NCBI GenBank assembly: GCA_028826165.1
Contig: JAPDFW010000114.1
Coordinates: forward strand, 434,001-498,000
Reading direction: 5' to 3'
Length of the DNA stretch: 64,000 nucleotides
DNA from: Anaeramoeba ignava BMAN
Taxonomy: Eukaryota > Protista > Anaeramoebae
Position 1 is the stretch's first letter. Every line of letters begins with the position of its first letter. The notes beneath the pieces are model-generated. The model saw only the letters and a list, made by a program, of their open reading frames with translations, was not told the origin of the DNA and made no database searches. Position numbers and translations under genes: made by a program. This document shows, piece by piece, positions 4,819-60,479 of this stretch.

Positions 4819-7800
4819 ATGCAATTCTTTTCTCAAAATCAAGAAGTTTATCAAGGAAATTTAACACAATATCGAGGAAAAAATGGTCAAACATTCAGTT
4901 TTTATATTGAAGGAAATAAATTAGGAACTGTTTATGGAACTGATATTTATACAGATGATTCAAATTTATCAACAGCTGCAGTTCATTCAGGTGTTTTAAA
5001 AGTTGGAGAAAAAGGAACCATTTTTGTTGAAATATTAGAAGGTCAACAAAGTTATAATTCAACAACAAGAAATGGAATAACTTCACATGGATATGGATCT
5101 TGGCATGGAAGTTTTAGAATATTACAATCATCAACAGATATTTCAACTTCTTTAATTGAACAACCTCAATTCAAACAAACCGAAATTAAACAAATTCAAA
5201 TTCAACAAAACCAAGTATTATTTCAAGGAAAATTATCAACATATAGAGGAAAAAATGGTCAAGTATTTGATTTTTATGTTGAAGGAAAAAATTCAGGAAT
5301 TGTTTATGGAACTGACATTTATACAGATGATTCTGATTTAGGAACAGCTGCTGTTCATTTTGGTGTTTTAAAAGTTGGAGAAAAAGCAAATATAACTGTT
5401 GAAATATTAGAAGGTCAACAAAGTTATATTCCATCAACAAGAAATGGAATAACTTCTCGCAATTGGGGATCTTGGCATGGAAGTTTTAGAATATTACAAT
5501 CATCAACAGATATTTCAATTCCTATAAATCAAAATCAAGAGGTTTATCATGGAAATTTAACAAAACATCGAGGAAAAAATGGTCAAACATTCAATTTTTA
5601 TGTTGAAGGATCTAATTTAGGAACTATTTATGGAACTGATATTTATACTGATGATTCTTATTTAGCAGCAGCTGCAGTTCATTTTGGTGTTTTGAAAGTT
5701 GGAGAAAAAGCAAATATAATAGTTGAAATATTACCAGGTCAACAAAGTTATAATTCAACAACAAGAAATGGAATAACTTCTCGTGGATATGGATCTTGGT
5801 ATGGAAGTTTTAGAATATTAAAAAAATCAGAGCAAATTCCAAATCCTTTAATTGAACAAACTCAATTAAATCAAACATTATATCAAGGAAATTTAACATC
5901 ATATAGAAATCAAGTTGGTCAAACACTTAATTTTTATGTTGAAGGATCTAATTCAGGAACTATTTATGGAACTGATATTTATACAGATGATTCTTATTTA
6001 CCAACAGCTGCAGTTCATTCTGGTGTTTTAAAGGTTGGAGAAAAAGCAAATATAATAGTTGAAATATTATCAGGTCAACAAAGTTATAATTCAACAACAA
6101 GAAATGGAATAACTTCTTATCGTTGGGATAGTTGGTATGGAAGTTTTAGAATATTAAGATCATCAACAGATACTTCAACTCCTTTAAATCAATATCAACA
6201 AAATCAAACATTATATCAAGGAAATTTAACATCATATCGAAATAAAGTTGGCCAAACACTTAATTTTTATGTTGAAGGATCTAATTCAGGAACTATTTAT
6301 GGAACTGACATTTATACTGATGATTCTTATTTAGGAACAGCTGCAGTTCATTTTGGTGTTTTAAAAGTTGGAGAAAAAGGAACCATTTTTGTTGAAATAT
6401 TACCAGGTCAACAAAGTTATAATTCAACAACAAAAAATGGAATAACTTCTCGTGGATATGGGTCTTGGTATGGAAGTTTTAGAATATTAAAATCATCAAC
6501 AGATACTTCAACTCCTTTAAATCAATATCAACAAAATCAAACATTATATCAAGGAAATTTAACACCATATAGAAATCAAGTTGGTCAAACACTTAACTTT
6601 TATGTTGAAGGATCTAATTTAGGAACTATTTATGGAACTGATATTTATACTGATGATTCTGATTTAGCAACAGCTGCAGTTCATTTTGGTGTTTTAAAAG
6701 TTGGAGAAAAAGCAAATATAATAGTTGAAATATTATCAGGTCAACAAAATTATAATTCTTCAACAAGAAACGGAATAACTTCTTATAGTTGGGATAGTTG
6801 GGATGTAAGCTTTAGAATATTAAGATCATCAACAGATACTTCAACTCCTTTAACTAAAGATCAATTATTGTATCAAGGAAATTTAACATCATATCGAGGA
6901 AAAAATGGTCAAAAATTTAATTTTTATGTTGAAGGATCTAATTCAGGAACTATTTATGGAACTGATATTTATACAGATGATTCTTATTTACCAACAGCTG
7001 CAGTTCATTCTGGTGTTTTAAAAGTTGGAGAAAAAGCAAATATAATAGTTGAAATATTATCAGGTCAACAAAGTTATAATTCAACAACAAGAAATGGAAT
7101 AACTTCTTATCGTTGGGATAGTTGGTATGGAAGCTTTAGAATATTAAGATCATCAACAGATACTTCAACTCCTTTAAATCAATATCAACAAAACCAAACA
7201 TTATATCAAGGAAATTTAACATCATATCGAGGACAAAACGGTCAAAAATTTAACTTTTATGTTGAAGGATCTAATTCAGGAACTATTTATGGAACTGATA
7301 TTTATACTGATGATTCTGATTTAGGAACAGCTGCAGTTCATTTTGGTGTTTTAAAAGTTGGAGAAAAAGCAAATATAACTGTTGAAATATTACCAGGTCA
7401 ACAAAGTTATAATTCAACAACAAAAAATGGAATAACTTCTTATCGTTGGGATAGTTGGTATGGAAGTTTTAGAATATTAAGATCATCAACAGATACTTCA
7501 ACTCCTTTAAATCAATATCAACAAAACCAAACATTATATCAAGGAAATTTAACACCATATAGAAATCAAGTTGGTCAAACACTTAATTTTTATGTTGAAG
7601 GATCTAATTCAGGAGCTATTTATGGAACTGATATTTACACAGATGATTCTGATTTAGCAACAGCTGCAGTTCATTTTGGTGTTTTAAAGGTTGGAGAAAA
7701 AGCAAATATCTTAGTTCAAATATTATCAGGTCAACAAAGTTATAATTCAACAACAAAAAATGGAATAACTTCACATAGTTGGGATAGTTGGGATGTAAGC

Positions 7801-10800
7801 TTTAGAATATTAAAATCATCAACAGATATTTCAACTCCTTTAAATCAGAAAACGCAAGATAATCAAACATTATATCAAGGAAATTTAACATCATATCGAG
7901 GACAAAACGGTCAAACATTTAACTTTTATGTTGAAGGATCTAATTCAGGAACTGTTTATGGAACTGATATTTATACTGATGATTCTAAATTATCAACAGC
8001 TGCAGTTCATTTTGGTGTTTTAAAAGTTGGAGAAAAAGCAAATATAATAGTTGAAATATTACCAGGTCAACAAAGTTATAATTCTTCAACAAGAAACGGA
8101 ATAACTTCACATAGTTGGGATAGTTGGTATGGAAGCTTTAGAATATTAAAATCATCAACAGATACTTCAACTCCTTTAACTAAAGATCAATTATTGTATC
8201 AAGGAAATTTAACGACATATAGAGGGAAAATAAACCAAAAATTTAATTTTTATGTTGAAGGATCTAATTCAGGAACTATTTATGGAACTGATATTTATAC
8301 TGATGATTCTGATTTAGGAACAGCTGCAGTTCATTTTGGTGTTTTAAAGGTTGGAGAAAAAGCAAATATAACTGTTGAAATATTATCAGGTCAGCAAAGT
8401 TATAATTCAACAACAAAAAATGGAATAACTTCTTATAGTTGGGATAGTTGGTATGGAAGCTTCAGAATATTAGATGTATTAACAGATACTTCAACTCCTT
8501 TAATTAAGCCAAATCAAATCCAGCAAACTCAAGAAAAACCATTATATCAAGGAAATTTAGCACAATATCGAGGAAAAAATGGAGAAAAATTTGATTTTTA
8601 TATTGAAGGAAGTAATTCAGGATTTGTTTATGGAACTGATATTTATACAGATGATTCACATTTAGCAACAGCAGCAGTTCATGCAGGAATTTTGAAAGTT
8701 GGAGAAAAAGGAGAAATAACTGTTGAAATATTACCAGGTATACAAGGTTACAATGGAACAACAAGAAATGGAATAAATTCAAGAAGTTGGGATTCTCATT
8801 ATGGAAGTTTTAGAATTTTAAAATCAAAAACAGATACTTTAACTCCTTTAACTAAAGATCAATTATTGTATCAAGGAAATTTAACGACATATAGAGGGAA
8901 AATAAACCAAAAATTTAATTTTTATGTTGGAGGATCTAATTCAGGAACTATTTATGGAACTGATATTTATACAGATGATTCTAAATTATCAACAGCTGCA
9001 GTTCATTTTGGTGTTTTAAAAGTTGGAGAAAAAGCAAATATAACTGTTGAAATATTACCAGGTCAACAAAGTTATAATTCAACAACAAAAAATGGAATAA
9101 CTTCTTATCGTTGGGATGGTTGGTATGGAAGCTTTAGAATATTAGATGTATTAACAGATACTTCAACTCCTTTAATTAAGCCAAATCAAATCCAGCAAAC
9201 TCAAGAAAAGCCATTATATCAAGGAAATTTAGTACAATATCGAGGAAAAAATGGAGAAAAATTTGATTTTTATATTGAAGGAAGTAATTCAGGATTTGTT
9301 TATGGAACTGATATTTATACAGATGATTCACATTTAGCAACAGCAGCAGTTCATGCAGGAATTTTAAAAGTTGGAGAAAAAGGAGAAATAACTGTTGAAA
9401 TATTACCAGGTATACAAGGTTACAATGGAACAACAAGAAATGGAATAAATTCAAGAAGTTGGGATTCTCATTATGGAAGTTTTAGAATATTAAAATCAAA
9501 AACAGATACTTCAACTCCAATATTTCAACCAATTAATCAATTTAATCAATTTGATCAAAATCAAAATCAAAATCAAAATCAATTTAATCAATATCAACAA
9601 AATCAAAATCAAAATCAAAATCAATTTAATCAATTTAATCAATTTAATCAATTCCAACAAAATCAAAATCAATTTAATCAATTTCAACAAAATAAAAATC
9701 AAAATCAATTTAATCAATATCAACAAAATCAAAATCAATTTAATCAATTTAATCAATTCCAACAAAATCAAAATCAATTTAATCAATTTCAACAAAATCA
9801 AAATCAAAATCAATTTAATCAATTTCAACAAAATCAAAATCAATTTAATCAATTTAATCAAAATCAAAATCAATTTAATCAATTTCAACAAAATCAAAAT
9901 CAATTTAATCAAAATCAATTTAATCAAAATCAAAATCAAAATCAATTTAATCAATTTAATCAATATCAACAAAATCAAAATCAATTTAATCAATTTCAAC
10001 AAAATCAAAATCAATTTAATCAATTTCAACAAAATCAAAATCAGTTCCAACAAAATCAATTACATACAGGAAATTTATCTAAATATAAAAACCAAATTGG
10101 ACAAAAATTTGATTTTTATATTGAAGGAACTGATACAGATATTATTTATGGAACTGATATTTATACAGATGATTCTAAATTATCAACAGCTGCAGTTCAC
10201 GCAGGATTTTTAGGTATTAAAGAAAAAGGAAAAATAACTGTTGAAATATTACCACCTCAAAAAAACTTTAGATCATCAACAAGAAATAGAATAACTTCAG
10301 ATATTTGGGAATTTCAATCAGGTTGTTATAGAATAATTGATGTATCAAAAGATAACTCAATACTTTTAAATCAAATTCAACAAACTCAAGAAAAACCATT
10401 ATATCAAGGAAATTTAGCACAATATCGAGGAAAAAATGGAGAAAAATTTGATTTTTATATTGAAGGAAGTAATTTAGGATTTGTTTATGGAACTGATATT
10501 TATACAGATGATTCACATTTAGCAACAGCAGCAGTTCATGCAGGAATTTTGAAAGTTGGAGAAAAAGGAGAAATAACTGTTGAAATATTACCAGGTCTAC
10601 AAAGTTACAATGGAACAACAAGAAACGGAATAATTTCAAGAAGTTGGGATTCTCATTATGGAAGTTTTAGAATATTAAAATCAAAAACAGATACTTCAAC
10701 TCCAATATTTCAACCAATTAATCAATTTAATCAATATCAAGTTGAAGAAACTCAGGAAAAATTATTATATCAAAATCAACAAAATCAATTACATACAGGA

Positions 10801-11412
10801 AATTTATCTAAATATAAAAACCAAATTGGACAAAAATTTGATTTTTATATTGAAGGAACTGATACAGATATTATTTATGGAACTGATATTTATACAGATG
10901 ATTCTAAATTATCAACAGCTGCAGTTCACGCAGGATTTTTAGGTATTAAAGAAAAAGGAAAAATAACTGTCGAAATATTACCACCTCAAAAAAACTTTAG
11001 ATCATCAACAAGAAATAGAATAACTTCAGATATTTGGGAATTTCAATCAGGTTGTTATAGAATAATTGATGTATCAAAAGATAATTCAATACTTTTAAAT
11101 CAAATTCAACAAACTCAAGAAAAACCATTATATCAAGGAAATTTAGCACAATATCGAGGTCAAAATGGACAAAAATTTGATTTTTATATTGAAGGAAGTA
11201 ATTTAGGATTTGTATTTGGAACTGATATTTATACTGATGATTCAACATTATCAGTAGCAGCAGTTCATGCAGGTTTATTGAAAATTGGAGAAAAAGGAGA
11301 AATAACTGTTGAAATATTACCAGGTATACAAAGTTATAATGGAACAACAAGAAACGAGATAATTTCGAGAAGTTGGGGTAATTTTCCTGGAAGTTTTAGA
11401 TTCATAAAATAA
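4819..11412 (+). CDS. Multi-LCCL-domain protein (18 tandem LCCL-like domains plus a Q/N/F-rich linker), intronless, 2197 aa
   Basis: I count 18 copies of (Y/F)GTDIYTDDSxLxxAAVHxG...VEILxGQQSYxxTTRNGITS...GSFRI, the LCCL signature. Low-complexity QNQFNQF tract at about 9530-10060. No obvious signal peptide. Confidence 0.88.
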   Translation: MQFFSQNQEVYQGNLTQYRGKNGQTFSFYIEGNKLGTVYGTDIYTDDSNLSTAAVHSGVLKVGEKGTIFVEILEGQQSYNSTTRNGITSHGYGSWHGSFRILQSSTDISTSLIEQPQFKQTEIKQIQIQQNQVLFQGKLSTYRGKNGQVFDFYVEGKNSGIVYGTDIYTDDSDLGTAAVHFGVLKVGEKANITVEILEGQQSYIPSTRNGITSRNWGSWHGSFRILQSSTDISIPINQNQEVYHGNLTKHRGKNGQTFNFYVEGSNLGTIYGTDIYTDDSYLAAAAVHFGVLKVGEKANIIVEILPGQQSYNSTTRNGITSRGYGSWYGSFRILKKSEQIPNPLIEQTQLNQTLYQGNLTSYRNQVGQTLNFYVEGSNSGTIYGTDIYTDDSYLPTAAVHSGVLKVGEKANIIVEILSGQQSYNSTTRNGITSYRWDSWYGSFRILRSSTDTSTPLNQYQQNQTLYQGNLTSYRNKVGQTLNFYVEGSNSGTIYGTDIYTDDSYLGTAAVHFGVLKVGEKGTIFVEILPGQQSYNSTTKNGITSRGYGSWYGSFRILKSSTDTSTPLNQYQQNQTLYQGNLTPYRNQVGQTLNFYVEGSNLGTIYGTDIYTDDSDLATAAVHFGVLKVGEKANIIVEILSGQQNYNSSTRNGITSYSWDSWDVSFRILRSSTDTSTPLTKDQLLYQGNLTSYRGKNGQKFNFYVEGSNSGTIYGTDIYTDDSYLPTAAVHSGVLKVGEKANIIVEILSGQQSYNSTTRNGITSYRWDSWYGSFRILRSSTDTSTPLNQYQQNQTLYQGNLTSYRGQNGQKFNFYVEGSNSGTIYGTDIYTDDSDLGTAAVHFGVLKVGEKANITVEILPGQQSYNSTTKNGITSYRWDSWYGSFRILRSSTDTSTPLNQYQQNQTLYQGNLTPYRNQVGQTLNFYVEGSNSGAIYGTDIYTDDSDLATAAVHFGVLKVGEKANILVQILSGQQSYNSTTKNGITSHSWDSWDVSFRILKSSTDISTPLNQKTQDNQTLYQGNLTSYRGQNGQTFNFYVEGSNSGTVYGTDIYTDDSKLSTAAVHFGVLKVGEKANIIVEILPGQQSYNSSTRNGITSHSWDSWYGSFRILKSSTDTSTPLTKDQLLYQGNLTTYRGKINQKFNFYVEGSNSGTIYGTDIYTDDSDLGTAAVHFGVLKVGEKANITVEILSGQQSYNSTTKNGITSYSWDSWYGSFRILDVLTDTSTPLIKPNQIQQTQEKPLYQGNLAQYRGKNGEKFDFYIEGSNSGFVYGTDIYTDDSHLATAAVHAGILKVGEKGEITVEILPGIQGYNGTTRNGINSRSWDSHYGSFRILKSKTDTLTPLTKDQLLYQGNLTTYRGKINQKFNFYVGGSNSGTIYGTDIYTDDSKLSTAAVHFGVLKVGEKANITVEILPGQQSYNSTTKNGITSYRWDGWYGSFRILDVLTDTSTPLIKPNQIQQTQEKPLYQGNLVQYRGKNGEKFDFYIEGSNSGFVYGTDIYTDDSHLATAAVHAGILKVGEKGEITVEILPGIQGYNGTTRNGINSRSWDSHYGSFRILKSKTDTSTPIFQPINQFNQFDQNQNQNQNQFNQYQQNQNQNQNQFNQFNQFNQFQQNQNQFNQFQQNKNQNQFNQYQQNQNQFNQFNQFQQNQNQFNQFQQNQNQNQFNQFQQNQNQFNQFNQNQNQFNQFQQNQNQFNQNQFNQNQNQNQFNQFNQYQQNQNQFNQFQQNQNQFNQFQQNQNQFQQNQLHTGNLSKYKNQIGQKFDFYIEGTDTDIIYGTDIYTDDSKLSTAAVHAGFLGIKEKGKITVEILPPQKNFRSSTRNRITSDIWEFQSGCYRIIDVSKDNSILLNQIQQTQEKPLYQGNLAQYRGKNGEKFDFYIEGSNLGFVYGTDIYTDDSHLATAAVHAGILKVGEKGEITVEILPGLQSYNGTTRNGIISRSWDSHYGSFRILKSKTDTSTPIFQPINQFNQYQVEETQEKLLYQNQQNQLHTGNLSKYKNQIGQKFDFYIEGTDTDIIYGTDIYTDDSKLSTAAVHAGFLGIKEKGKITVEILPPQKNFRSSTRNRITSDIWEFQSGCYRIIDVSKDNSILLNQIQQTQEKPLYQGNLAQYRGQNGQKFDFYIEGSNLGFVFGTDIYTDDSTLSVAAVHAGLLKIGEKGEITVEILPGIQSYNGTTRNEIISRSWGNFPGSFRFIK

Positions 11413-11579: not shown

Positions 11580-14500
11580 TTACCAACATTCCTCAAGATA
11601 AAAATTTTGATTGAGGAGTTGATCAAAAGTCTTTTTACCGAAAATATCAATCAAAGTTAACCTGATATCTTTTCCCATAGGAAGGTTTCCACAAACCATA
11701 ATTTTCCCTTTATTCGCAATAACCTCTTTAACCAAACTAGCATTTTCCTTGATTTTATGCTGAACATAAACTTTTTCCTTTTGTTCACGCGAAAAGGCAA
11801 AAAATGTTTTTGTGATAACATTTGAACTAGCAAATTTTTCAATTTCATCTTTTAAGATAAAATCAACATCTCTTGTTCTGCAACCGAAGAAAAGATACAA
11901 AGGCTTTAAAGATTTGGGATCCAAAGTGGCTCTGTAATCAAGCATTCCTTTGAAAGCAGCCAAGCCAGTACCAGCTGCAATCATTATTGTTGGCGCTGAT
12001 GAATCGTACTTGAAAGTTGTTTTTTTGAGGAAAATCATGACTTGCGATTTGTTTGGGATTGTTTGCAACAGATATTCCGAGCAGATACCCTTTTCAACAA
12101 CTTGGACAATAATTTTCAGTTTGTTTGGATCGTTTTTTGGGGTTGATGCAATTGAGTAGAAGCGTGGTGCTAAACGAGGCAAGTTTTCATACAGAAATTG
12201 GAATGTAATTTTAATGGACTTGAACTGGTCAAAAAAATCAACAATGTTTTTCTTGTTTTTCAAAACAACCTCTTCATATTCTTTCTTGTTTGTTGCCAGT
12301 CGTTCAAGTTGTGTTTTTTCGCCAGAATTTTCAGCGTAGTTTGCAAGGAGTTGAAGAATATGCTGATCTGGTGCTCCTGTTATATCGCAAAAACGCGAAA
12401 GATAATCGAAGATCTTAAGCGGTTTGTTAAAGCGTTTTGTTGGCGGTTCAACTTTGAATTGCTGATTCAAATCCAAGTGCAATAAACGCGCGAATTTTTC
12501 GACATGTTCTTGTGGGTTAATTGGACAAATACCAACATGATCTCCAGGCTGGTAATCGATTCCAGATTTGGAAATATCAAGTAAAATTTGCCGACATTTT
12601 CGAGCGTTATTCTGGTCTTTGCCTGCGTTGAGAAGTTCTTTATTTTCTAAGACAAGCGCTGAGTAAGGGTTGTCGTAATCAATTTTGTTAGAGGGTAAAT
12701 TCGAGTTTTCGAAATTGATGTCGATCCATTGCTGGTTGTCGTCGACTTGCATGTTATTTGAGTCAAGGAAAACAACTTGAGAGACTGATTTTGTTTTCTG
12801 TTGGATGATCTTAAGACCCTGATTCAAGCGGATCTGTTTGTTTAATTTATGCGCCCAATTTTCGAAATCATCATCTTTGATAGAATCATCGCGTTCACCG
12901 CGTGCGATGATTCTTAATCCTCCAAGATCCTCCATTCTTTGATCTATAAAACGCGCGAATTTTTGATATCTTCCACTAAAAACAGTGTTTCCAAGTCCAT
13001 AAACAGCGTAATTAGTGCTTGAAAAAGTGTGAAGTGGCAAATTACTACTGAGATATTTAAATAAGTTTACTGCGTTATCTGGTGGATTTCCTTCTCCATA
13101 TGTTGATGTGATAAAAATAACAACCCTTTGAGACGCAAGAAGCTCAGGAGCGCAATCTGCAAGATCAGCAACTTTGATATCGAAGGATTCTTCTGTTTCT
13201 TTGTTTTGTTTCATTATTTGCACCAAACGAAGAGCATAACTTTCTGCTTTTCCAGTTTGTGTTCCAAAAACAATCAAAATTTGGTGATCTTGATCAAAAG
13301 GTGAATTTTTAAAAAAATTCGAATTAGGAACTTTTGGATCGATATTTGATCCGTAAATTATCGCTTTTGCTTCTTCTTTAGACGGTCTTTTTTTAAGAGG
13401 ATTTTGTACTGTATCACTCCAAATGCCTGGAATTATAGTTCCGCATTTTTTGCAAGCGCCGTTTTTGATTCCTTTTACTTCAACACTGTATCCCCAACGT
13501 TCAATCAGTTTCTCATTGCATTTAGGACAGAATGTTGCTGTTAGAGAGTCGCTGCTTATATTTCCTCCGAAAATGTAATTGAGACCTTCTTCTTTCCCTA
13601 TTTTGTATGCTCTTTTGATTGTTGAAACTGGTGTTCTTGATTTGTGGCTCATTTTGTATGCTCCGTGGAATGCACTGATGTGCCATGGGATGTTAACATC
13701 AATACTTGCAATGAATTTTGCAATATTTCGGATTTCTTCATCCGAATCATTTTCATCAGGAATAAGTAGTGTTGTCTTTGTTTTGATTTTTGTAAAAATA
13801 ATTCAATTATTTAAAATATTATTTAAAATTAAACTTACAACTTCAACCCAAACTCCAAGATTATAAAAACGCTCAATATTTTTCAATACAGGAGATAATC
13901 TAACACCAGATAAATCATGATAAAAACGATTTGTAAAAGCTTTTAAATCAATATTAATTGCATCTAAAACAGGAGCAAGTAATTCAACAGCTTCAGGAGA
14001 CATATATCCATTTGAAACATAAACATTTTTGATTCCTTTTTTTTTAGCTAAACTAGCAGTATCAAAAGCATATTCTGTCCAAATAGTTGGTTCATTATAA
14101 GTATAAGCAATTGTTTTGCAATTATTCTTTAAACATAAACGAACTATTTCTTCAGGTGGAAGTGATTGTCCAAGTGATATATTTTCTATATCTTCAACTC
14201 CTCTTGTTGCCATTGAAATATGCCAATTTTGACAAAATGAACATGAAAAATTGCATCCGATTGTACCAACTGAATAAGCTGTTGAAGTTGGATAAAAATG
14301 GTGTAACTTTTTTTATATTCAATTTTATAATTATATTTAAAATTATATTTAAAATTATAATTAAAATTATATTTATATTTAGATTTATATTCAATTTTAT
14401 AATTATATTTAAAATTATATTTAGATTTAGATTTAGATTTATATTTATATTTATATTTATATTTATATTTATATTTTGATTTATATTTAAAATTATATTT

Positions 14501-15798
14501 ATATTTATATTTAAAATTATAATTATAATTATAATTATAATTATATATAGATTTATATTTATATTTATATTTATATTTATATTTATAATTATATTTATAT
14601 TTATATTTATATTTATATTTATATTTATATTTATATTTATATTTATATTTATATTTAAAATTATATTTATATTTATATTTATAATTATATTTATATTTAT
14701 AATTATATTTATAATTATAATTATATTTATATTTAGATTTATATTTATATTTATATTTATATTTATATTTATATTTATATTTATATTTATATTTATATTT
14801 ATATTTATATTTATATTTATATTTATAATTATATTTATAATTATATTTATATTTATATTTATATTTATATTTATATTTATATTTATATTTATATTTATAT
14901 TTATATTTATAATTATATTTATATTTATAATTATATTTATAATTATATTTATAATTATATTTATATTTATATTTATATTTATATTTATATTTATATTTAT
15001 ATTTATAATTATATTTATATTTATATTTATATTTATATTTATATTTATATTTATATTTATAATTATAATTTATATATATATAGATTTAGTTATATTTAGA
15101 TTTAGATTTAGATTTATATTTATATTTATATTTATATTTTGATTTATATTTAAAATTATATTTATATTTATATTTATATTTATATTTATATTTATATTTA
15201 TATTTATATTTATATTTATATTTATATTTATATTTATATTTATATTTATATTTATATCTATATTTATATTTATATTTAAAATTATATTTATATTTATATT
15301 TATATTTATTTAGATTTAGATTTATATTTATATTTATATTTATATTTAGATTTAGATTTATATTTAAAATTATATTTATATTTATAATTATATTTATATT
15401 TGTATTTATATTTATAATTATATTTGTATTTGTATTTATATTTATATTTATATTTATATTTATATTTATATTTATATTTATATTTATATTTATATTTATA
15501 TTTATATTTATATTTATATTTATATTTATATTTATATTTATAATTATATTTATATTTATATTTATATTTATAATTATATTTATATTGTAACTCATTTTCT
15601 ACAAACTGGTTTTTTCTCAATTGGATCAATATGTTTTGCAATTGCATATCCATAAATTTCTAAATATAATTTTCCATCTCTATTACGTCTTACTCCACAT
15701 ATTCCAGTTTTTTTAGGTTCAATAATACATCTTTGATAACAACAAGTGCACCTAACTTGTTTTTTATCTAATTTTTCATAAAGAATTGCTTCAGCCAT
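11580..15798 (-). CDS. amrS: AmmeMemoRadiSam-type radical SAM enzyme (AmrS-like) fused to a CPR-like diflavin (FMN/FAD/NADPH) reductase; 3 exons (15607-15798, 13839-14306, 11580-13775), about 951 aa
   Basis: AmrS part: [25 protein letters not shown]...DPIEKKP|[18 protein letters not shown] (CxxxCxxC, 14232-14255), [27 protein letters not shown]|[14 protein letters not shown] and TFCPKC...[12 protein letters not shown]. Reductase part: [26 protein letters not shown] (flavodoxin); [21 protein letters not shown] (FAD); [25 protein letters not shown] and C-terminal W (NADPH). Both introns are GT-AG, phase 0. Confidence 0.92.
14307..15606. repeat. (TATATT)n microsatellite making up most of the 1.3-kb first intron of the radical SAM gene
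   Basis: Directly visible hexamer repeat between the GT donor (15606) and the AG acceptor (14307) on the minus strand. Confidence 0.92.
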
Positions 15799-15914: not shown

Positions 15915-16292
15915 TTATTTTTTTTGTTCTTCTTTTTTTAAATTTTGCCAAAGATAAAATAAATTTTCTTCAGGATCTAAAAAATGAAGAGAATAACCAA
16001 CTTTTGGAATTAACATTTTTTCAGAAATAATTTTTCCACCAGATTCTTTTATTGCTTTAACAGCTTCATCAATATCATCAACTTGTATTGAATTAATAAC
16101 ACCTTTTTTATCTCTTACTTTTGCTAAACCTCCATTAATTCCTGCTGTTTCTCCTTCTTTAGTTGAAATCAACCAATAATCAAAATTTACATTTTCTGTT
16201 TTTTGAATTTTCCAGCCAAATACTTTTTCATAAAATCCTTTAATTTTAAGAGGATCTTCAGCATGAATATCAAAATGAACAACTGGATTCAT
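15915..16292 (-). CDS. VOC/glyoxalase-bleomycin resistance family protein, prokaryotic type, intronless
   Basis: VVHFDIHAEDP...FYEKVFGWK...GINGGL...IQVDDIDEAVKAIKESGGKII...IPKVGYSLHFLDPEENLFYLWQ is the typical VOC pattern. Confidence 0.9.
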   Translation of the reverse strand: MNPVVHFDIHAEDPLKIKGFYEKVFGWKIQKTENVNFDYWLISTKEGETAGINGGLAKVRDKKGVINSIQVDDIDEAVKAIKESGGKIISEKMLIPKVGYSLHFLDPEENLFYLWQNLKKEEQKK

Positions 16293-20869: not shown

Positions 20870-23800
20870 ATGTCAAGAAGAAGACAAATTATAATTTCAG
20901 GTTTAATAAAAGAAAAAAAAAAATTTTTAAATAAATTTTTTAATTAATTTTTTAATTAATTTTTTCTCCAAATTTAGATGATGAATTTGGAAGTTATGGA
21001 AGAAAATATGATTATCCTGAAGATAATAGCTTTGGATTTTCTCCTTCTATTGGTATTTTTTTTATTGATTTAAATTAAATTTTTTTAAATTAAATTTTAT
21101 TTAATTTATTTAAATTTTTTTAAATTAAATTTTTAATAAAAAAAAAGAACGTTTTATGATTGATCCAAATCAAGAAGGTGTTGAAATTTCTCTTGAACAA
21201 TATGATGATGAGCAAAACAATGATCAAAGCAATTCAAATTCAGAAGATATTGATATTAATGAACAAGAATTTTTAGAAGATATTGTTACAATAAAGGATT
21301 TTTTTGAGAATAAATTTACAGAAAGAGAGATTGAAGATGCTCTTATTGAAAGTGATTACAACCCACATGATGCAATAGAATTATTACAAGACTTTTTAAA
21401 CAGCCAGAAAAACAATCAAAATAATCAAACACAAAATCAACAAGATAAACAAGAAATTTCAAATCCTATTGCAATAAATGGAAAAAAGACAAGAAATCAA
21501 GGAATAAATGCTAATGAACAGTTGAATAAACCACAAAGAAATAATGGAAAGAAAAAGAAAAAGAAAAAGAAAAAGAAGAAAAATCAGAATCAAAATCAAA
21601 ATCAAAATCAAAATCAAAATCAAAATCAAAATCAGAATCAGAATCAAAATCAAAATCAAAATCAAAATCAAAATAAAAATCAAAATAAAATTAAAAATGA
21701 TATTCAAAATCAAATTAAAAATGATATTCAAAATAATATTCAAAATAATATTCACAATGATATTCACAATGATATTCACAATGATATTGAAAAAGATATT
21801 TCTTTTGAAGATGGTTTTGGATTTGAAATTCAAACAGTTTATAAAAAAAGCAACAAAAAACGCAATAAGAAAAAAAAGAATAATCAAAATCCAAACACAA
21901 AAAAGCAATCATCTTTAATGAATATTGCTAATATTTCATTAGATTCACCACAAAATCAAAAGAATCAAAAGAATCAAAATCAAAAAAATCAAAATCAAAA
22001 AAATCAAAAGAATCAAAATCAAAATCAAAAAAATATAAATCAAACAAATCAAAAGAATCAAACTCCAAAAATAAATCCAAAAACAAAAAATCAAAATAAT
22101 CAAACTCCAAAAAACCTAAATCAAAATAATCAAACTCCAAAAATAAAAAATCCAAAAATATCAAAAATATCAACTCCAAAAACTCCAAAAACTCCAAAAA
22201 CTCCAAAAACTCCAAAAAATTTAAATTCAGAACAATCAACTCCCAAAAAAATTCAACACCAAAGATCAAAAAAAAACAAGAAATTAATTGTAGAAATAAC
22301 GGAAAAAGAAAATTTGCAAAATGTAAACAAAAAGGAACATTTGAATTTGGTTGTTTGCGGACATGTTGATTCAGGAAAATGCTTTAAAAAAAACACAGAA
22401 ATTCTAATGTCAAATGGACAAATTAAATTAGTTCAAGATATCAAACAAAATGATGAAATTATGGGATTCAATTCAATTCCAAGAAAAGTTGTAAATATAA
22501 CAAAGGGGCATGGAGAACTTTTTGAGATACGCCAAAGTTGTGGAAGCAATTACACTGTTAATAAGCATCACGTGCTGACTTTAGCTGCAAGGAGTACCTT
22601 TTCTCGCGAATACCAAGTTGTTGATATTTCTGTTAGAAAATTTTTGACGATACCAAAAAATCAACGCAAAAATTTTTATGGAATTCAGAGTTCAGTGGAT
22701 TTCCCAACAAAATCAACATCACAAAATCCATTTGAATTTGGAAAAAGCATTGGAAAGCAAATTTGCAAATTGATCGATAATATGGATCAGGAAATTCCGT
22801 TAATAATTCCTGACGAGTTGAAAAGCAATTCTGTTTATATACGCAAAAATTTACTTGAAGGAATTCTTGATTCACTTTATTTATATTACAATACAAACAG
22901 CAACTCTTTTCTTATTCCTTTGAAACAGAAAATCAACACCGAAATTTACAAAGATTTACTGTTTGTTTCACGTTCTTTGGGTGTTGAGTGTATTTCAAGA
23001 GAAAATGAGATTGAAATGAAATATAATATTTTTTTGCAAGATAAGGAAAGAAATTTCAACACAATTACAATGTCAGAATTAGAAATTGAGTTTGTTGGAG
23101 AAGATGAATATTATGGATTCCAACTGGATCGCCAAGCAAAAGAGAGATTTTTCTTGGGAAATTTTACAATAACACACAACTCGACAATTATGGGACATCT
23201 TTTGCTTGATCTTGGACTTGTTTCTCAACACCAGCTCAGCAAGAACGAGAGAGAGTCTGAGAAGATCGGAAGAAAGTCTTTTAAGTTTGCATGGTTTCTT
23301 GATGAACATGAAGACGAAAGAAGCCATGGAGTAACAATTGATGTTGGAGTTAAACATTTCGAAACAAAAAATAAATCTATCACGTTATTAGACACACCAG
23401 GACACTCAGATTTCATTCCAAATATGATTTCAGGCGCTTCCCAAGCTGACGTCGCTATTTTAGTTGTTGATGCAGATGTCGGCGCCTTTGAAAAGGGATT
23501 TTTTTATGGGCAAACAAAAGAACATGTCCAACTTGTTAGAAGTATGGGCATTACACAGCTCATTGTGGCTGTTAATAAAATGGACTGTGTTGATTATTCA
23601 AATAAACGGTTTGATGAAATCAAATCGAAACTGCAGGTTTTTCTTGTCAAAATTGGTTTCCAGCAAGAAAATATTCAATGGATTCCTTGCAGTGGTTTCG
23701 AAGGATGGAATTTATTTTCAAATCAGAATTTTTCAAAAGAAATTCTTGAAAAAACTAAATGGTATAATGGAAATCCACTTGTTGATGCAATTGATAGTTT

Positions 23801-24589
23801 TAAATCTGTTGCAAGAGACTTAGAGAAACCGTTTCGTTTGTGTATTTCTGATGTATTTTCTCATCAAATTTATGGCTTGACAGTTACTGGAAAAGTTGAA
23901 AGCGGAAATGTTATGGTTTCTGATAAAGTAATCATAAATAATCTCAAAATATTTATTTCAAAATGATTTTAATATTTATTTTTTATAGATCCTGGTTATG
24001 CCAATAGCTCAAGTTTGCACAATTAAAAATTTAAAATTGGATCAAAAAGATGTTCAATTTGCTCAAGCTGGTGATAATATTCAGATTGGGATTTCTGGTG
24101 TTGATGAATCTCTTCTTTCGTAAATTTGAAATTCCAAAAAAAACAAATTAATTGTTTTTCAATTTAATTCAATTCAATTTAATTTAATTTAATTTATATC
24201 TTTTTAAAAATTAAAGAACTGGTCAAATTCTTTGTGATCCTGAATTTCCTATTCCAATTGTTACAGAATTTAAAGCTCATATTTTAACTCGAGATTTACC
24301 AAATCCTATTGTTAGAGGCTCTCCTGGAATTTTATATTCACAAAGTTTGAATGAATCTGCAATTATTAAGGAAATTATTGGATTAATTGATAAAACAACC
24401 AATCAATTACTTCCAAAAAAAGTTAAAGTTATTACAAGTCATTCATTAGCAATGGTTTTAATTGAAACTTCAAGACCTGTTTGTTTAGAAAATTTTGAAA
24501 ATATGAAACAATTTGGAAGATTTGCATTTAGATTTCAAGGAAAAACAGTTGCTTCTGGTATAGTTAAAGAAATTATGACTCAAAAATAG
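20870..24589 (+). CDS. HBS1: HBS1-like translational GTPase (ribosome rescue; eRF3/EF1A family) containing an intein; exons 20870-20900, 20978-21052, 21148-23927, 23989-24119, 24217-24589
   Basis: N-terminus MSRRR...FGSYG...FGFSPS; HBS1_N-like EIEDALIESDYNPHDAIELL; LNLVVCGHVDSGK[intein]STIMGHLL; FAWFLDEHEDERSHGVTID; DTPGHSDFIPNMISGA; GQTKEH; NKMD; PCSGFEG; domains II/III ending GRFAFR..GKTVASG. Confidence 0.92.
22380..23180 (+). mobile_element. Intein, 267 aa (Hint domain with probably degenerate LAGLIDADG endonuclease remnants), inserted in the HBS1 P-loop
   Basis: Begins CFKKNTEILMSNGQIKLVQDI (block A), has YTVNKHHVL (block B TxxxH), and ends EYYGFQLD...FFLGNFTITHN followed by extein Ser. 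Removing it restores GHVDSGK|ST. Remnant RKNLLEGILDS and DLLFVSRSLG motifs. Confidence 0.96.
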
Positions 24590-56725: not shown

Positions 56726-58567
56726 ATGAATTTAATCCCTTTAAATGATATTTATTTTTTTGGAAGAAATGAAAATCCAAAACTTATTCAAAATAAAACG
56801 AAAAAAATAACAAAACCAATTAAATTTAAATTTAAATTTAAATTTAAATTTAAAAATGAAAATGAAAATGAAAATGAAAAACAAATTAAACAAATTTCAT
56901 CAAGTTGTTTTTCAACAATTTTCCTTTTTGAAAATGGAAAAGCAATAGAATATTTAAATGAAAATGATTCAAATCCAAAACCTGAAAAAATCCAAATTGA
57001 AGAAAATATTCAAAAAGTAACTGTTGGTGTTGAAAATGAAGCTATTTTAACAAAAGAAGGAAATGTATTTGCAAAAGAAAGTTATGCAAATCCAAATAAT
57101 CCAAATCAATTTATCAATATTTCATCATTAATTGAAGATAAAAATGATAGAATAATTGAAGATATTGTTTCTGGATGGAATTCAACTTATTTATTAACTT
57201 CAAATCAAAATGCTTATGGAATTGGTTCAAATGAATATGGTCAACTTGGTTTAGATCCGGAAACACTTGAAGAAAAAGAAAAACCAATTTTAATGATGAA
57301 AAATGTTTCTAAAATATTTTCAGGAATTTGTTCTTATCATGTTTTTCTTTTAAATTCAAATCAAGAATTATTTGGATGTGGTGATAACAATTATGGTCAA
57401 CTTGGATTAAGAAAATCAAAAAGAAAGCAAACAAGAATATATAATTTAACCAAAATCCAAAATATTCCAAAAGGCAAAATAATTGATATTAAATCTGGAT
57501 ATAATCATTCAATAATGTTGATTGAAAATGAAAATCAAAATCAAGATCTAAAAAGAAAACTTTATTCATGTGGAAATCATCTATATAATGGGATTGGCAA
57601 AAAAAATAAAGATACTTATGAATTTACTGAAATCAAATCATCTTTATTGAAAAATGATAATATTCTTGATTTTTCTGTTGGTTATTCACATACTTTGATT
57701 TTAACTTCCAATTCAAAATTAATCGGATTTGGAAGCAACAATTATTGTCAATTAGGAACTGGAGATACAAATTATCAATTAATTCCAATTCAAATTAAAC
57801 TTCCTAAATTAAGATTTAATGAAAATATTTCTTATTATCATATTTCTTGTGGTGATTATAAATCCTTTCTTTGTTCTCCTCCTTTTTCTAATCTTGAAGA
57901 AGATTTAATAAAACTATTTCGAAGAAAAGAATTTTATGATATTTCATTTAAAACCAAAAATGGAGAAATAATTGAAGCTCATAAATTAATATTGAAATAT
58001 AGATTAAATCAAAATCAAAATCAAATTGAAAAACTTCAAGAAATTATTTCAACAAAATCAATTAAAGAATCAAATCAAATATTTGAAATGATTTATTCAA
58101 ATAATTCCAAAATAAATCCAATATTATATTCTGAAATTAAAGAGATTATAAATTCTAATGAAAAAATTGAAGAAACAATGAAAAGAATTTATTTAAATGA
58201 AAATGAAAATGAAAAAGATTTTATTATTGAAAGAAAAGAAAAGAAATATAAATTTCCAAAATTAATATTAATAATGAGAAGTGAATTATATCGAGGAATG
58301 TTTTTATCTGTAATAAATGATACTTCTAATAAAGTTACAGATTATAGTGAATTAAGTAATAAATCATTTCAAATATTTGAATATTGGATTTATTCAAATC
58401 AAATTAAAGATGATATTCAAATTACAAAAGAAATTATTCAAGAACTTAAAAGAGGAATTGATTATTTTCAATTAAATGAAACAAATCCAAATTTATTTGA
58501 TTTATTAATTAACAAATTTAATAATCAAAATCAAAAAAAAAGAAAATTAAAATTTGAATGTTTTTAA
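56726..58567 (+). CDS. RCC1-repeat + BTB-like domain protein, copy 1
   Basis: GIGSNEYGQLG, GCGDNNYGQLG, SGYNHS, VGYSHTL (RCC1 repeats); FYDISF...AHKLIL and LILIMRSELYRGMF...YWIYSN (two BTB-like domains). Confidence 0.9.
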   Translation: MNLIPLNDIYFFGRNENPKLIQNKTKKITKPIKFKFKFKFKFKNENENENEKQIKQISSSCFSTIFLFENGKAIEYLNENDSNPKPEKIQIEENIQKVTVGVENEAILTKEGNVFAKESYANPNNPNQFINISSLIEDKNDRIIEDIVSGWNSTYLLTSNQNAYGIGSNEYGQLGLDPETLEEKEKPILMMKNVSKIFSGICSYHVFLLNSNQELFGCGDNNYGQLGLRKSKRKQTRIYNLTKIQNIPKGKIIDIKSGYNHSIMLIENENQNQDLKRKLYSCGNHLYNGIGKKNKDTYEFTEIKSSLLKNDNILDFSVGYSHTLILTSNSKLIGFGSNNYCQLGTGDTNYQLIPIQIKLPKLRFNENISYYHISCGDYKSFLCSPPFSNLEEDLIKLFRRKEFYDISFKTKNGEIIEAHKLILKYRLNQNQNQIEKLQEIISTKSIKESNQIFEMIYSNNSKINPILYSEIKEIINSNEKIEETMKRIYLNENENEKDFIIERKEKKYKFPKLILIMRSELYRGMFLSVINDTSNKVTDYSELSNKSFQIFEYWIYSNQIKDDIQITKEIIQELKRGIDYFQLNETNPNLFDLLINKFNNQNQKKRKLKFECF

Positions 58568-58614
58568 AAATATTTTTTTTGATTTTTCATTTTTCATTTT
58601 TTTTCTTTTTAAAA

Positions 58615-60396
58615 ATGAATGAAATTATATTTTTTGGTTTTAATCAAAATCCAAAACTTATCAAAAATGAAAGAGATGAAATAACAAAACCAATTCAATT
58701 TAAATTTGAAAATGAAAATGAAAAACAAATTAAACAAATTTCATCAAGTGAATTTTCAACAATTTTCCTTTTTGAAAATGGAAAAGCAATAGAATATTTA
58801 AAAGATTTAAAACAAAATCCTCAAGAAATCCAAATTGAAAATATTCAAAAAGTAACTGCTGCTTTTGTAAAAGGAGTTATTTTAACAACAGAAGGAAATG
58901 TATTTTCATTAGGAAAAAAAATTAATCCAATAAATCCAAATGAATTTATCAATATTTCATCATTAATTGAAGATATAAATGATAGAATAATTCAAGATGT
59001 TGTTTCTGGATACAATTCAGTTTATTTATTAACTTCAAATCAAAATGTTTATGGAATTGGTTCAAATCTATCTGGTCAACTTGGATTTGATTCTGAAACA
59101 CTTGAAAAAACAGAAAAACCAATTTTAATGATGAAAAATGTTTCTAAAATATTTTCAGGAAATTCTTCATATTCTGTTTTTCTTTTAAATTCAAATCAAG
59201 AATTATTTGGATGTGGTGAGAATTATTTCGGTCAACTTGGATTAGGAGAATCAGAAGAAGATAAAATCTATAAATTAACCAAAATTCCAAATATTCCAAA
59301 AGGTAAAATAATTGATATTAAATGTGGATTTCATCATTCAATAATGTTGATTGAAAATGAAAATCGAAAAAGAAAACTTTATTCATGTGGATATTATCTA
59401 TATAATGGGATTGGCAAAAAAAATGAAAATATTTATGAATTTACTGAAGTCAAATCATCTTTATTGAAAAATGATGATATTATTGATTTTTCTGTTGGAG
59501 ATTATCATACTTTGATTTTAACTTCCAATTCAAAATTAATAGTATTTGGAGATAATTATTATGGTCAATTAGGAACTGGAAAGAGAAAAGATAAATTAAT
59601 TCCAATTCAAATAAAACTTCCTGAATTAAGATTTAATGAAGAAATTTTCAATTATCATGTTCTTTGTGGATATTTGAATTCATTTCTTTATTATTCTCCT
59701 TTTCTTTCTTTTTCCAATCTTGAAGAAGATTTGATAAAACTATTTCGAAGAAAAGAATTTTGCAATATTTCATTTAAAACCAAAAATGGAGAAATAATTG
59801 AAGCTCATAAATTAATATTGAAATATAGATTAAATCAAAATCAAAATGAAATTGAAAAACTTCAAGAAATTATTTCAACAAAATCAATTAAAGAATCAAA
59901 TCAAATATTTGAAATGATTTATTCAAACAGAATAATAAATCCAAAATTATATTCAGAAATTAAAGAAATTATAAATTCTAATGAAAAAATTGAAGAAACA
60001 ATGAAAAGAATTTATTTAAATGAAAATGAAAAAGATTTTATAATTGAAAGAAAAGAAAAACAATATAAATTTCCAAAATTAATATTAATAATGAGAAGTG
60101 AATTATATCGAGGAATGTTTTTATCTGTAACTGAAGATACTTCTAATAAAGTTACAGATTATAGTGAATTAAGTAATAAATCATTTCAAATATTTGAATA
60201 TTGGATTTATTCAAATCAAATTAAAAATGGAATTCAAATTACAAAAGAAATAATTAATGAACTTAAAAGAGGAATTGATTATTTTCAATTAAATCAAACA
60301 AATCCAAATTTATTTGATTTATTAATTAACAAATTTAATAATCAAAATCAAAATCAAAATCAAAATTCAAATGAAAAGAAATGTTTAATTTATTAA
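58615..60396 (+). CDS. RCC1-repeat + BTB-like domain protein, copy 2
   Basis: Paralogue of copy 1. The start is placed at MNEIIFFG (58615) by alignment with the other copies, not at the track's 58558. Confidence 0.88.
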   Translation: MNEIIFFGFNQNPKLIKNERDEITKPIQFKFENENEKQIKQISSSEFSTIFLFENGKAIEYLKDLKQNPQEIQIENIQKVTAAFVKGVILTTEGNVFSLGKKINPINPNEFINISSLIEDINDRIIQDVVSGYNSVYLLTSNQNVYGIGSNLSGQLGFDSETLEKTEKPILMMKNVSKIFSGNSSYSVFLLNSNQELFGCGENYFGQLGLGESEEDKIYKLTKIPNIPKGKIIDIKCGFHHSIMLIENENRKRKLYSCGYYLYNGIGKKNENIYEFTEVKSSLLKNDDIIDFSVGDYHTLILTSNSKLIVFGDNYYGQLGTGKRKDKLIPIQIKLPELRFNEEIFNYHVLCGYLNSFLYYSPFLSFSNLEEDLIKLFRRKEFCNISFKTKNGEIIEAHKLILKYRLNQNQNEIEKLQEIISTKSIKESNQIFEMIYSNRIINPKLYSEIKEIINSNEKIEETMKRIYLNENEKDFIIERKEKQYKFPKLILIMRSELYRGMFLSVTEDTSNKVTDYSELSNKSFQIFEYWIYSNQIKNGIQITKEIINELKRGIDYFQLNQTNPNLFDLLINKFNNQNQNQNQNSNEKKCLIY

Positions 60397-60479
60397 ATTT
60401 AAAATTAAAATTTAAAATCAAAATTAATAATTAAAATTAAAATTCACAAAATCATTTTTTCATTTTTTTCTTTTTAAAA

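What the first reader, a model, noticed from the sequence alone, without database searches (positions are those of the whole stretch)
11580..15798. Self-sufficient radical SAM enzyme: AmrS-like domain fused to a complete P450-reductase-like diflavin module
Seen: after removing two phase-0 introns, one ~951-aa ORF holds a full AmmeMemoRadiSam radical SAM enzyme (N-terminal Cys cluster, DPIEKKP, CxxxCxxC, YTYNEP, C-terminal CxxC...CxxC-GIW), a ~45-aa linker, then flavodoxin, FAD and NADPH domains ending in the FAD-shielding Trp. The junction (about 13419-13280) lies inside one continuous exon, so it is not a gene-model merge. Known: radical SAM enzymes need one-electron reduction of the [4Fe-4S] cluster, supplied in bacteria by flavodoxin/flavodoxin reductase. 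Eukaryotic TYW1 carries a fused flavodoxin only. AmrS is a prokaryotic family of unknown substrate found with AMMECR1 (AmrA) and MEMO1 (AmrB) homologues. Inference: a laterally acquired AmrS was wired to a eukaryote-type diflavin reductase, giving an NADPH->FAD->FMN->[4Fe-4S] chain in one polypeptide, analogous to P450 BM3 or NOS. I know of no description of this architecture, and it could help reveal what the Amme-Memo-RadiSam system does.
Basis: partly seen in the sequence, partly recalled or inferred. Interest (0 to 1): 0.92.

Follow-up and report, generated by a model that had tools for sequence, protein, structure and literature searches.

The report
Radical SAM enzyme with built-in reductase
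An oxygen-avoiding amoeba (Anaeramoeba ignava) has a real, spliced gene that joins a radical-making enzyme of unknown job (AmrS) to a complete NADPH-driven electron supply, a design found in no paper searched; it gives a practical handle on a pathway whose two partner proteins, AMMECR1 and MEMO1, also exist in humans.

Summary
Confirmed. Three minus-strand exons give a 951-aa protein, identical to NCBI KAJ5068588.1 (annotated only as 'flavodoxin family protein'). It has an intact AmrS radical SAM domain (TIGR04337 349 bits, cut-off 220), a 45-aa linker and a complete CPR-type FMN/FAD/NADPH module. Spliced contigs from two studies skip both introns and cross the junction without mismatch. A. 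ignava has four copies (one has lost the cluster motif) and A. flamelloides two clusters of them; no other full fusion was found among 1.84 billion representatives. Tritrichomonas species carry AmrS plus flavodoxin only. The 'laterally acquired prokaryotic AmrS' idea needs revising. Stand-alone AmrS occurs in Kipferlia, Barthelona, GEM-RC1, Monocercomonoides, Paratrimastix and Blastocystis. The best tree holds all eukaryotic copies together (AU p 0.72) and shows no prokaryotic donor. The genome has four AMMECR1 and three MEMO1 genes and no glycyl-radical enzyme. Most likely an NADPH-driven self-reducing radical SAM enzyme of the AMMECR1/MEMO1 pathway; activity and substrate are untested. The fusion logic has precedent (BM3, NOS, PNO, hydrogenase-CysJ, TYW1). 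The scan noted the paralogues before on other pieces of this genome.

The parts
15607..15798 (-). Exon 1 (aa 1-64): N-terminal Cys cluster C17/C20/C24/C34 (probable structural metal site) and DPIEKKP
   Evidence: TIGR04337 positions 4-61; invariant Cys
14307..15606 (-). Intron 1, 1300 nt, GT..AG, phase 0, AT-rich hexamer microsatellite
   Evidence: spliced out in X1/X2 contigs (loose end at 14306 equals exon-1 letters); same position in paralogues
13839..14306 (-). Exon 2 (aa 65-220): radical SAM core with CxxxCxxC (C82/C86/C89), eukaryote-type DIE[DN] insert, YTYNEP, DLK
   Evidence: (PF04055 E 6.7e-22)
13776..13838 (-). Intron 2, 63 nt, GT..AG, phase 0
   Evidence: joint 13775/13839 in two RNA-like runs
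13416..13775 (-). Exon 3, first part (aa 221-340): end of the AmrS barrel, PWH, C-terminal CxxC...CxxC and GIW
   Evidence: (TIGR04337 positions 214-339)
13284..13415 (-). Inter-module linker (about 45 aa), conserved in length and partly in sequence among the Anaeramoeba copies, with a predicted helix at aa 353-361
12846..13283 (-). FMN (flavodoxin-like) domain, aa about 385-530: GTQTG phosphate loop, STYGEG.PP, GLGN
11583..12845 (-). Hinge, connecting, FAD and NADPH domains, aa about 531-951: RFYS, GICS, GTG.A, FSRE/KVYVQ (NADPH 2'-phosphate site), VCG, terminal EECW
11580..15798 (-). Whole gene: AmrS-diflavin reductase fusion, 951 aa (A. ignava KAJ5068588.1)

Best explanation
A soluble, probably cytosolic, self-reducing radical SAM enzyme. 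NADPH reduces FAD by hydride transfer and FAD passes single electrons to FMN. The mobile FMN domain, tethered 45 residues behind the AmrS barrel, then reduces the CxxxCxxC [4Fe-4S]2+ cluster to 1+, which cleaves SAM to the 5'-deoxyadenosyl radical (in cis, or in trans in a dimer as in BM3/NOS). The radical step is the AmrS step of the Amme-Memo-RadiSAM pathway, done together with the cell's AMMECR1 and MEMO1 proteins on a macromolecular substrate, most plausibly a nucleic-acid modification or repair reaction or the partner protein itself. Shown: gene, splicing, domains, intact cofactor motifs, conservation, partners in the genome. Inferred: cofactor loading, electron flow, location and pathway membership. 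Substrate: speculative. History (inferred): AmrS is old in anaerobic eukaryotes; a flavin module was added in or before the Anaeramoeba-parabasalid ancestor, is complete in Anaeramoeba and is flavodoxin-only in parabasalids.
For: Every cluster, SAM-barrel, FMN, FAD and NADPH motif is intact in this copy and in two further A. ignava copies plus the A. flamelloides ones. The domain order acceptor-FMN-FAD-NADPH is the order of BM3 and NOS, which the reductase half matches in the PDB, and of PNO/hydrogenase-CysJ (PMC4989108). Radical SAM enzymes need a one-electron reductant, and TYW1 uses a fused FMN domain for this (PMC8941971). AlphaFold gives mean pLDDT 86.7 and pTM 0.79 for the whole chain, with a closed-CPR-like reductase. 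There is no membrane anchor (maximum hydropathy 1.27 against 2.2-2.7 in CPR-like hits). Four of the five FAD_binding_1/NAD_binding_1 loci found in the genome are these fusions. Four AMMECR1 genes with RGCIG/DxRF motifs and three MEMO1 genes are present. [quoted passage not shown]
Against: There is no biochemistry for any AmrS in the papers held, and no solved AmrS structure. Electron transfer from a CPR-type FMN to a radical SAM cluster is uphill by textbook potentials (own knowledge) and must be pulled by SAM cleavage. The C88 paralogue keeps the whole reductase but has lost CxxxCxxC, DPIEKKP, YTYNEP and DLK, so the reductase can be retained without its supposed acceptor. The ESM Atlas model of the same protein has pTM only 0.51, so a fixed interface is not established. 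The partner genes are unlinked in this genome, so pathway membership rests on homology.
Confidence: 0.8

Rival explanations
1. Protein-activase variant: AmrS works like PFL-activating enzyme, and its substrate is a peptide loop of a partner protein (for example the conserved RGCIG loop of AMMECR1), not a nucleic acid. This is compatible with the electron chain above and differs only in substrate.
For: The closest solved fold by a wide margin is PFL-AE (VIA Z 23.3, rmsd 2.3 A over 226 residues; next NifB Z 17.5; Foldseek E 1.7e-14; HMM E 1.2e-16). DPIEKKP falls in the region that aligns with the PFL-AE N-terminal loop, which binds the substrate peptide (own knowledge). No glycyl-radical enzyme was found in the genome (PF02901, PF13597, PF01228), so any protein substrate would be of a new kind.
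Against: Shared fold shows no function: QueE, viperin and NifB are the next neighbours and act on small molecules or clusters. The RGCIG resemblance to a glycyl loop is my own loose analogy and is untested.
Confidence: 0.3
2. The reductase is a general cytosolic electron donor (a Tah18/NDOR1 or CPR stand-in for other Fe-S or radical enzymes), and AmrS is a docking or passenger domain.
For: The C88 copy keeps a full reductase on a dead AmrS. Metamonads are reported to lack Tah18/Dre2 (PMC6006210). The C-terminal Glu-x-Trp resembles NDOR1 (own knowledge), and the best Atlas structural match of the reductase half is an NDOR1 cluster (TM 0.88).
Against: Three of four A. ignava copies and both A. 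flamelloides clusters keep the AmrS catalytic motifs, and the AmrS half is more conserved between copies (64-70% identity) than the reductase half (35-43%). A stand-alone diflavin reductase exists on C113. By sequence the FMN domain is nearer CPR (70 bits) than NDOR1 (48.5 bits).
Confidence: 0.12
3. Recent lateral transfer of amrS from a prokaryote (for example the Desulfobacteraceae symbiont) into Anaeramoeba, then fusion.
For: Best stand-alone hits are prokaryotic at 53-57% identity, and LGT is frequent in Anaeramoeba (PMC11550330).
Against: AmrS is present in six other anaerobic eukaryote lineages. A DIE[DN]-type motif occurs only in eukaryotic or eukaryote-grouping sequences among 369 domains. 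FastTree groups 16 of them (SH 90). The tree with all 17 held together has a higher likelihood than the free search (AU p 0.72). No prokaryote is a supported sister, and the deltaproteobacterial sequences lie in another clade. Intron positions are shared across paralogues. An ancient transfer into a metamonad ancestor remains possible.
Confidence: 0.05
4. Assembly or annotation artefact joining two genes.
For: GC3 differs between exons 1-2 (0.06-0.08) and exon 3 (0.2-0.48).
Against: That change falls at intron 2, inside the AmrS domain, not at the junction. The junction is covered by single spliced and genomic contigs without mismatches, and the same fusion occurs at four loci and in a second species.
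Confidence: 0.01

Closest known systems
AmmeMemoRadiSam radical SAM enzyme AmrS (TIGR04337)
   Same: Full-length match over the cut-off, all invariant residues, and AMMECR1 and MEMO1 present in the same genome.
   Different: Eukaryotic, intron-containing and fused to a diflavin reductase. Prokaryotic fusions seen were to Memo, AMMECR1 or inteins, never to flavin domains among the hits listed.
Eukaryotic TYW1 (radical SAM flavoenzyme, PMC8941971)
   Same: Radical SAM domain with a fused FMN domain used for reductive activation.
   Different: TYW1 has only an N-terminal flavodoxin and a different radical SAM family. Here the module is C-terminal and includes the FAD and NADPH domains. A separate TYW1-like gene lies on C100. 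UniRef labels the parabasalid AmrS-flavodoxin proteins as TYW1, but they score 282-304 bits on TIGR04337.
Self-sufficient diflavin fusions: P450 BM3, nitric oxide synthase, pyruvate:NADP+ oxidoreductase, [FeFe]-hydrogenase-CysJ
   Same: Same domain order (catalytic acceptor, FMN, FAD, NADPH). The last two are typical of anaerobic protists (PMC4989108).
   Different: The acceptor here is a radical SAM [4Fe-4S] enzyme; no such member was found in the papers searched.
NADPH-cytochrome P450 reductase (POR) and NDOR1/Tah18
   Same: Best PDB sequence and fold match is CPR (237 bits; TM to target about 0.8); flavin and NADPH residues are kept.
   Different: No membrane anchor, Glu in place of the triad Asp, about 30% identity. 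The Anaeramoeba modules form their own clade (99/98) with unresolved placement, so orthology to POR, NDOR1 or PNO is not settled.
Pyruvate formate-lyase activating enzyme (PflA)
   Same: Nearest solved structure of the radical SAM barrel (Z 23.3).
   Different: 17-18% identity, far below the PflA HMM cut-off; extra N- and C-terminal Cys domains; no glycyl-radical enzyme found in the genome.

Membership tests
AmrS (TIGR04337) | HMM score over the curated cut-off of 220 bits, full length | tested here: met
   349.3 bits, model positions 4-339 of 349
AmrS (TIGR04337) | CxxxCxxC, DPIEKKP, YTYNEP, N- and C-terminal Cys clusters | tested here: met
AmrS (TIGR04337) | Co-occurrence with AMMECR1 (AmrA) and MEMO (AmrB) | tested here: met
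   4 and 3 loci with intact motifs, unlinked
Radical SAM superfamily | [4Fe-4S]-dependent reductive cleavage of SAM | not testable with these tools
   needs an anaerobic assay
Diflavin reductase (CPR-like) | FMN, connecting, FAD and NADPH domains in this order, with binding motifs | tested here: met
Diflavin reductase (CPR-like) | Ser-Cys-Asp triad and FAD-shielding aromatic residue | tested here: inconclusive
   Ser (RFYS), Cys (VCG) and Trp are present; Asp is replaced by Glu, invariant in all six Anaeramoeba sequences aligned
Diflavin reductase (CPR-like) | NADPH 2'-phosphate site (Ser-Arg, Lys, Tyr) | tested here: met
   FSRE..KVYVQ aligned with rat and plant CPR, invariant S, R, K and Y
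Microsomal CPR/POR | N-terminal membrane anchor | tested here: not met
   replaced by AmrS; no hydrophobic segment
CysJ (TIGR01931) | HMM cut-off 668 bits | tested here: not met
   266 bits
TYW1 | TYW1-type radical SAM domain behind an N-terminal flavodoxin | tested here: not met
   opposite order; archaeal TYW1 is a distant match (27 bits, Z 12.7)
Glycyl-radical enzyme activases (PflA, TIGR02493) | HMM cut-off and a cognate glycyl-radical enzyme | tested here: not met
   33.9 bits on exon 2 against a cut-off of 231.75; no PF02901, PF13597 or PF01228 match in the genome
NDOR1/Tah18 or PNO reductase module | Orthology in a tree with named references | tested here: inconclusive
   no named NDOR1 or PNO sequences were available; tree unresolved; Atlas structure hits include both

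The most novel reading that the evidence does not exclude
The Amme-Memo-RadiSAM pathway is ancestral in eukaryotes or at least in metamonads. Anaerobic protists kept its oxygen-sensitive radical enzyme while model aerobes kept only AMMECR1 and MEMO1, and Anaeramoeba built the first radical SAM enzyme that runs on NADPH through its own FAD/FMN chain. Reconstituting it with eukaryotic AMMECR1 and MEMO1 would reveal the original reaction behind two poorly understood human proteins, possibly a new protein-radical or RNA-modifying chemistry.
Probability: 0.35. Interest if true: 0.88.

Novelty: new variant of a known kind. Interest (0 to 1): 0.72.

Why it matters
No paper searched describes a radical SAM enzyme with a complete diflavin reductase; TYW1, with a flavodoxin domain only, is the nearest case. 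It names the physiological reductant for a large enzyme family (at least 7,990 close clusters) for which I found no biochemistry, and so removes one unknown from the assay: NADPH and SAM should suffice. It also places AmrS in eukaryotes that hold human-like MEMO1 and AMMECR1, which makes the long-standing prediction that the three act in one pathway (PMC2034487) testable with eukaryotic parts. A natural series exists for comparison: stand-alone (Blastocystis, Kipferlia), plus flavodoxin (Tritrichomonas), plus full reductase (Anaeramoeba), and a cluster-less paralogue as a control. A dithionite-free electron module could also be of use in radical SAM biocatalysis.

Tried and rejected
I searched the spliced model exon by exon by reference and sent no joined letters; whole-protein searches used the stored database protein P0001. 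Burroughs et al. 2019 (JBC, the paper cited for 'Memo-Ammecr1 systems') is not held, so I could not check whether its text or supplement shows this architecture; this is the main gap in the novelty claim. Ten paper searches found no radical SAM-diflavin fusion and no AmrS biochemistry, and the main text of the Anaeramoeba genome paper does not mention it. The careful IQ-TREE runs for AmrS did not finish; quick trees and one AU test are reported. I left out near-identical copies, the degenerate C88 copy and four long or distant rows. The flavodoxin-domain tree was unresolved, so a single origin of the parabasalid and Anaeramoeba fusions is only suggested (AmrS clade SH 90 but mixed with Blastocystis; pairwise scores). 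A metagenome scan with the reductase alignment gave no close relative or new fusion. The 933-aa Monocercomonoides and 901-aa prokaryotic hits are AmrS with unrelated N-terminal sequence, not reductase fusions. Rejected: gene-model merge, TYW1, CysJ, glycyl-radical activase, recent LGT.
Full report
Observation. The gene lies on the minus strand at 15798-11580 in three exons (15798-15607, 14306-13839, 13775-11580) separated by phase-0 GT..AG introns of 1300 and 63 nt, and encodes 951 aa. Scanned exon by exon, the pieces tile the AmrS model TIGR04337 (positions 4-61, 62-212, 214-339), and exon 3 goes on without a break into Flavodoxin_1, FAD_binding_1 and NAD_binding_1. The database holds the same protein as Anaeramoeba ignava KAJ5068588.1, named only 'flavodoxin family protein', and as a complete EukProt transcript ORF; each exon equals its slice of that record. 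I searched the model exon by exon and did not send a joined sequence; whole-chain work used that stored record (P0001).

Reads. Contigs of runs X1 and X2 (two studies; X2 may come from the source sample) skip intron 2 exactly and run from 14306 into exon-1 letters, so they are spliced cDNA. One 2817-nt X1 contig covers the end of exon 1, exon 2, the AmrS-flavodoxin junction and the stop with no mismatch. Genomic contigs X3 and X4 are contiguous and unspliced over the stretch laid.

AmrS half. It scores 349 bits against a cut-off of 220 and keeps every residue invariant in a 50-sequence alignment, including C17/C20/C24/C34, C82/C86/C89 and C303/C306/C328. AlphaFold models it at pLDDT 96.6. No AmrS has a solved structure; the nearest is PFL-activating enzyme (Z 23.3, rmsd 2.3 A over 226 residues), ahead of NifB, QueE and viperin. 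The genome search found no glycyl-radical enzyme, so it is not a classical activase here.

Reductase half. Best PDB matches are CPR (237 bits), then BM3-type (191), NOS (167) and CysJ (149). The FMN domain is nearer CPR (70 bits) than NDOR1 (48.5), although the Atlas structure search ranks an NDOR1 cluster and a PNO-like cluster first. FMN loops, RxYS, the catalytic Ser and Cys, the NADPH 2'-phosphate residues and the shielding Trp are present. The triad Asp is Glu in all six Anaeramoeba sequences aligned. There is no membrane anchor. The six modules form one clade (99/98) whose sister is unresolved. The full-length model has pLDDT 86.7 and pTM 0.79 and matches closed CPR; the Atlas model has pTM 0.51, so a fixed AmrS-reductase interface is only hinted at.

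Distribution. A. ignava has four such genes (contigs C104, C24, C60, C88), which are four of the five diflavin loci found. Both introns sit at the same codons in C24 and C60. The C88 copy has lost CxxxCxxC, DPIEKKP, YTYNEP and DLK but keeps most of the outer Cys ligands and the reductase. A. flamelloides has two clusters of orthologues. A full HMMER pass over 1.84 billion representatives gave only two full-length matches, both A. ignava. AmrS plus flavodoxin alone occurs in Tritrichomonas foetus, T. musculus, a parabasalid-like ENA contig and an unidentified organism (run DRR658064) whose linker and FMN domain are closest to the Anaeramoeba ones. Stand-alone AmrS occurs in Kipferlia, Barthelona, GEM-RC1, Monocercomonoides, Paratrimastix, Blastocystis and an unnamed flagellate contig. 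Every named eukaryotic hit is an anaerobe, but I saw only the top 120-150 hits per search, so absence from aerobes is not shown. No prokaryotic AmrS-flavin fusion appeared among the long hits listed.

Origin. A short DIE[DN]-type motif after the cluster loop marks only eukaryotic or eukaryote-grouping sequences among 369 domains. FastTree on 428 domains groups 16 of them (SH 90), with Paratrimastix and GEM-RC1 outside. Quick IQ-TREE runs leave the eukaryotic groups at an unresolved fork with no supported prokaryotic sister. Holding all 17 together gave a tree 15.6 log-likelihood units better than the free search (AU p 0.72); this does not prove a clade but fits one old origin. So AmrS was probably present in the metamonad ancestor, by inheritance or ancient transfer, and was not recently picked up by Anaeramoeba. 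A single fusion event before the Anaeramoeba-parabasalid split is plausible but not shown.

Partners and substrate. The genome has four AMMECR1 genes with RGCIG and DxRF and three MEMO1 genes (one tested: 183 bits to human MEMO1) with intact conserved motifs. Balaji and Aravind reported the prokaryotic linkage of AMMECR1, a radical SAM enzyme and a dioxygenase-like protein and predicted an RNA base modification (PMC2034487). Around 82 prokaryotic amrS loci the recurring neighbours from several phyla were Memo (9), endonuclease III (9), AMMECR1 (7) and archease/RtcB-like genes (5; RtcB recognised by eye). This mildly favours nucleic-acid modification or repair, while the PFL-AE-like fold favours a peptide substrate. 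I put these at about 0.4 and 0.3, the rest on small molecules or lipids.

Mechanism. Most likely NADPH -> FAD -> FMN -> [4Fe-4S] -> SAM cleavage within one chain or a dimer (0.8). The architecture and intact motifs are shown; electron flow is inferred from CPR/BM3/NOS chemistry and from TYW1, whose fused FMN domain supports activity with NAD(P)H (PMC8941971). The last step is uphill by textbook potentials, but methionine synthase reductase drives a similar SAM-coupled uphill reduction (own knowledge). The main rival is a general cytosolic donor role, suggested by the cluster-less C88 copy and by the reported lack of Tah18/Dre2 in metamonads (PMC6006210).

Comparison and novelty. Both modules belong to known families, and grafting a diflavin module behind an Fe-S enzyme is known in anaerobic protists (PNO, hydrogenase-CysJ; PMC4989108); this genome also has hydrogenase-flavodoxin fusions. 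A radical SAM domain with a complete diflavin reductase was found in none of the papers searched, with the caveat that Burroughs et al. 2019 could not be read. I class it as a new variant of a known kind. Other readers of this scan flagged the paralogues on other pieces of the genome; their notes agree and are not independent support.

Verdict. Real, expressed, conserved across the genus and apparently undescribed. Interest 0.72.

Noticed in passing
G000 contig C88, about 123100-128900 (L024; P0261/P0406, KAJ5071532.1): Fourth paralogue, annotated 'nitric oxide synthase-related': AmrS catalytic motifs lost, outer Cys clusters mostly kept and reductase intact; a likely pseudo-enzyme or electron donor.
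   Followed up: partly
P0007, P0133 (Tritrichomonas): AmrS-flavodoxin proteins are labelled 'tRNA 4-demethylwyosine synthase' in UniRef but are AmrS by HMM; probably mis-annotated.
   Followed up: yes
L043 (run DRR658064, P0017): Transcript-like 1795-nt contig of an unidentified organism with AmrS plus flavodoxin, whose linker and FMN domain are closest to Anaeramoeba; a possible intermediate form.
   Followed up: partly
window 15915-16292 (-): Intronless 125-aa VOC/glyoxalase-like gene 117 bp upstream on the same strand; no link to the fusion shown.
   Followed up: no
window 4819-11412 (+): 2197-aa ORF made of many tandem LCCL-like domains with a Q/N-rich stretch.
   Followed up: no
window 21156-23966 (+): Translation-factor GTPase ORF interrupted by a Hint (intein) domain; Anaeramoeba is known for nuclear inteins (own knowledge).
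   Followed up: no
window 56726-62303 (+): Three tandem RCC1-BTB genes of about 610 aa each.
   Followed up: no
L028, L029, L031, L032; L036, L038-L041: Other flavin-module fusions in this genome: four hydrogenase-flavodoxin-type genes (one checked by Pfam) and flavodiiron-rubredoxin-reductase-type fusions (one checked).
   Followed up: partly
P0005, P0006, P0018-P0022 and similar: Many prokaryotic AmrS proteins carry an intein with a LAGLIDADG endonuclease, and others are fused to Memo and/or AMMECR1.
   Followed up: no
L054, L080, L085, L110: amrS next to archease/RtcB-like genes and endonuclease III in several phyla, hinting at nucleic-acid repair.
   Followed up: partly
window 13775 vs 13839-15798: GC3 is 0.06-0.08 in exons 1-2 but 0.2-0.48 in exon 3; the change falls at intron 2, not at the domain junction. 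Unexplained.
   Followed up: no
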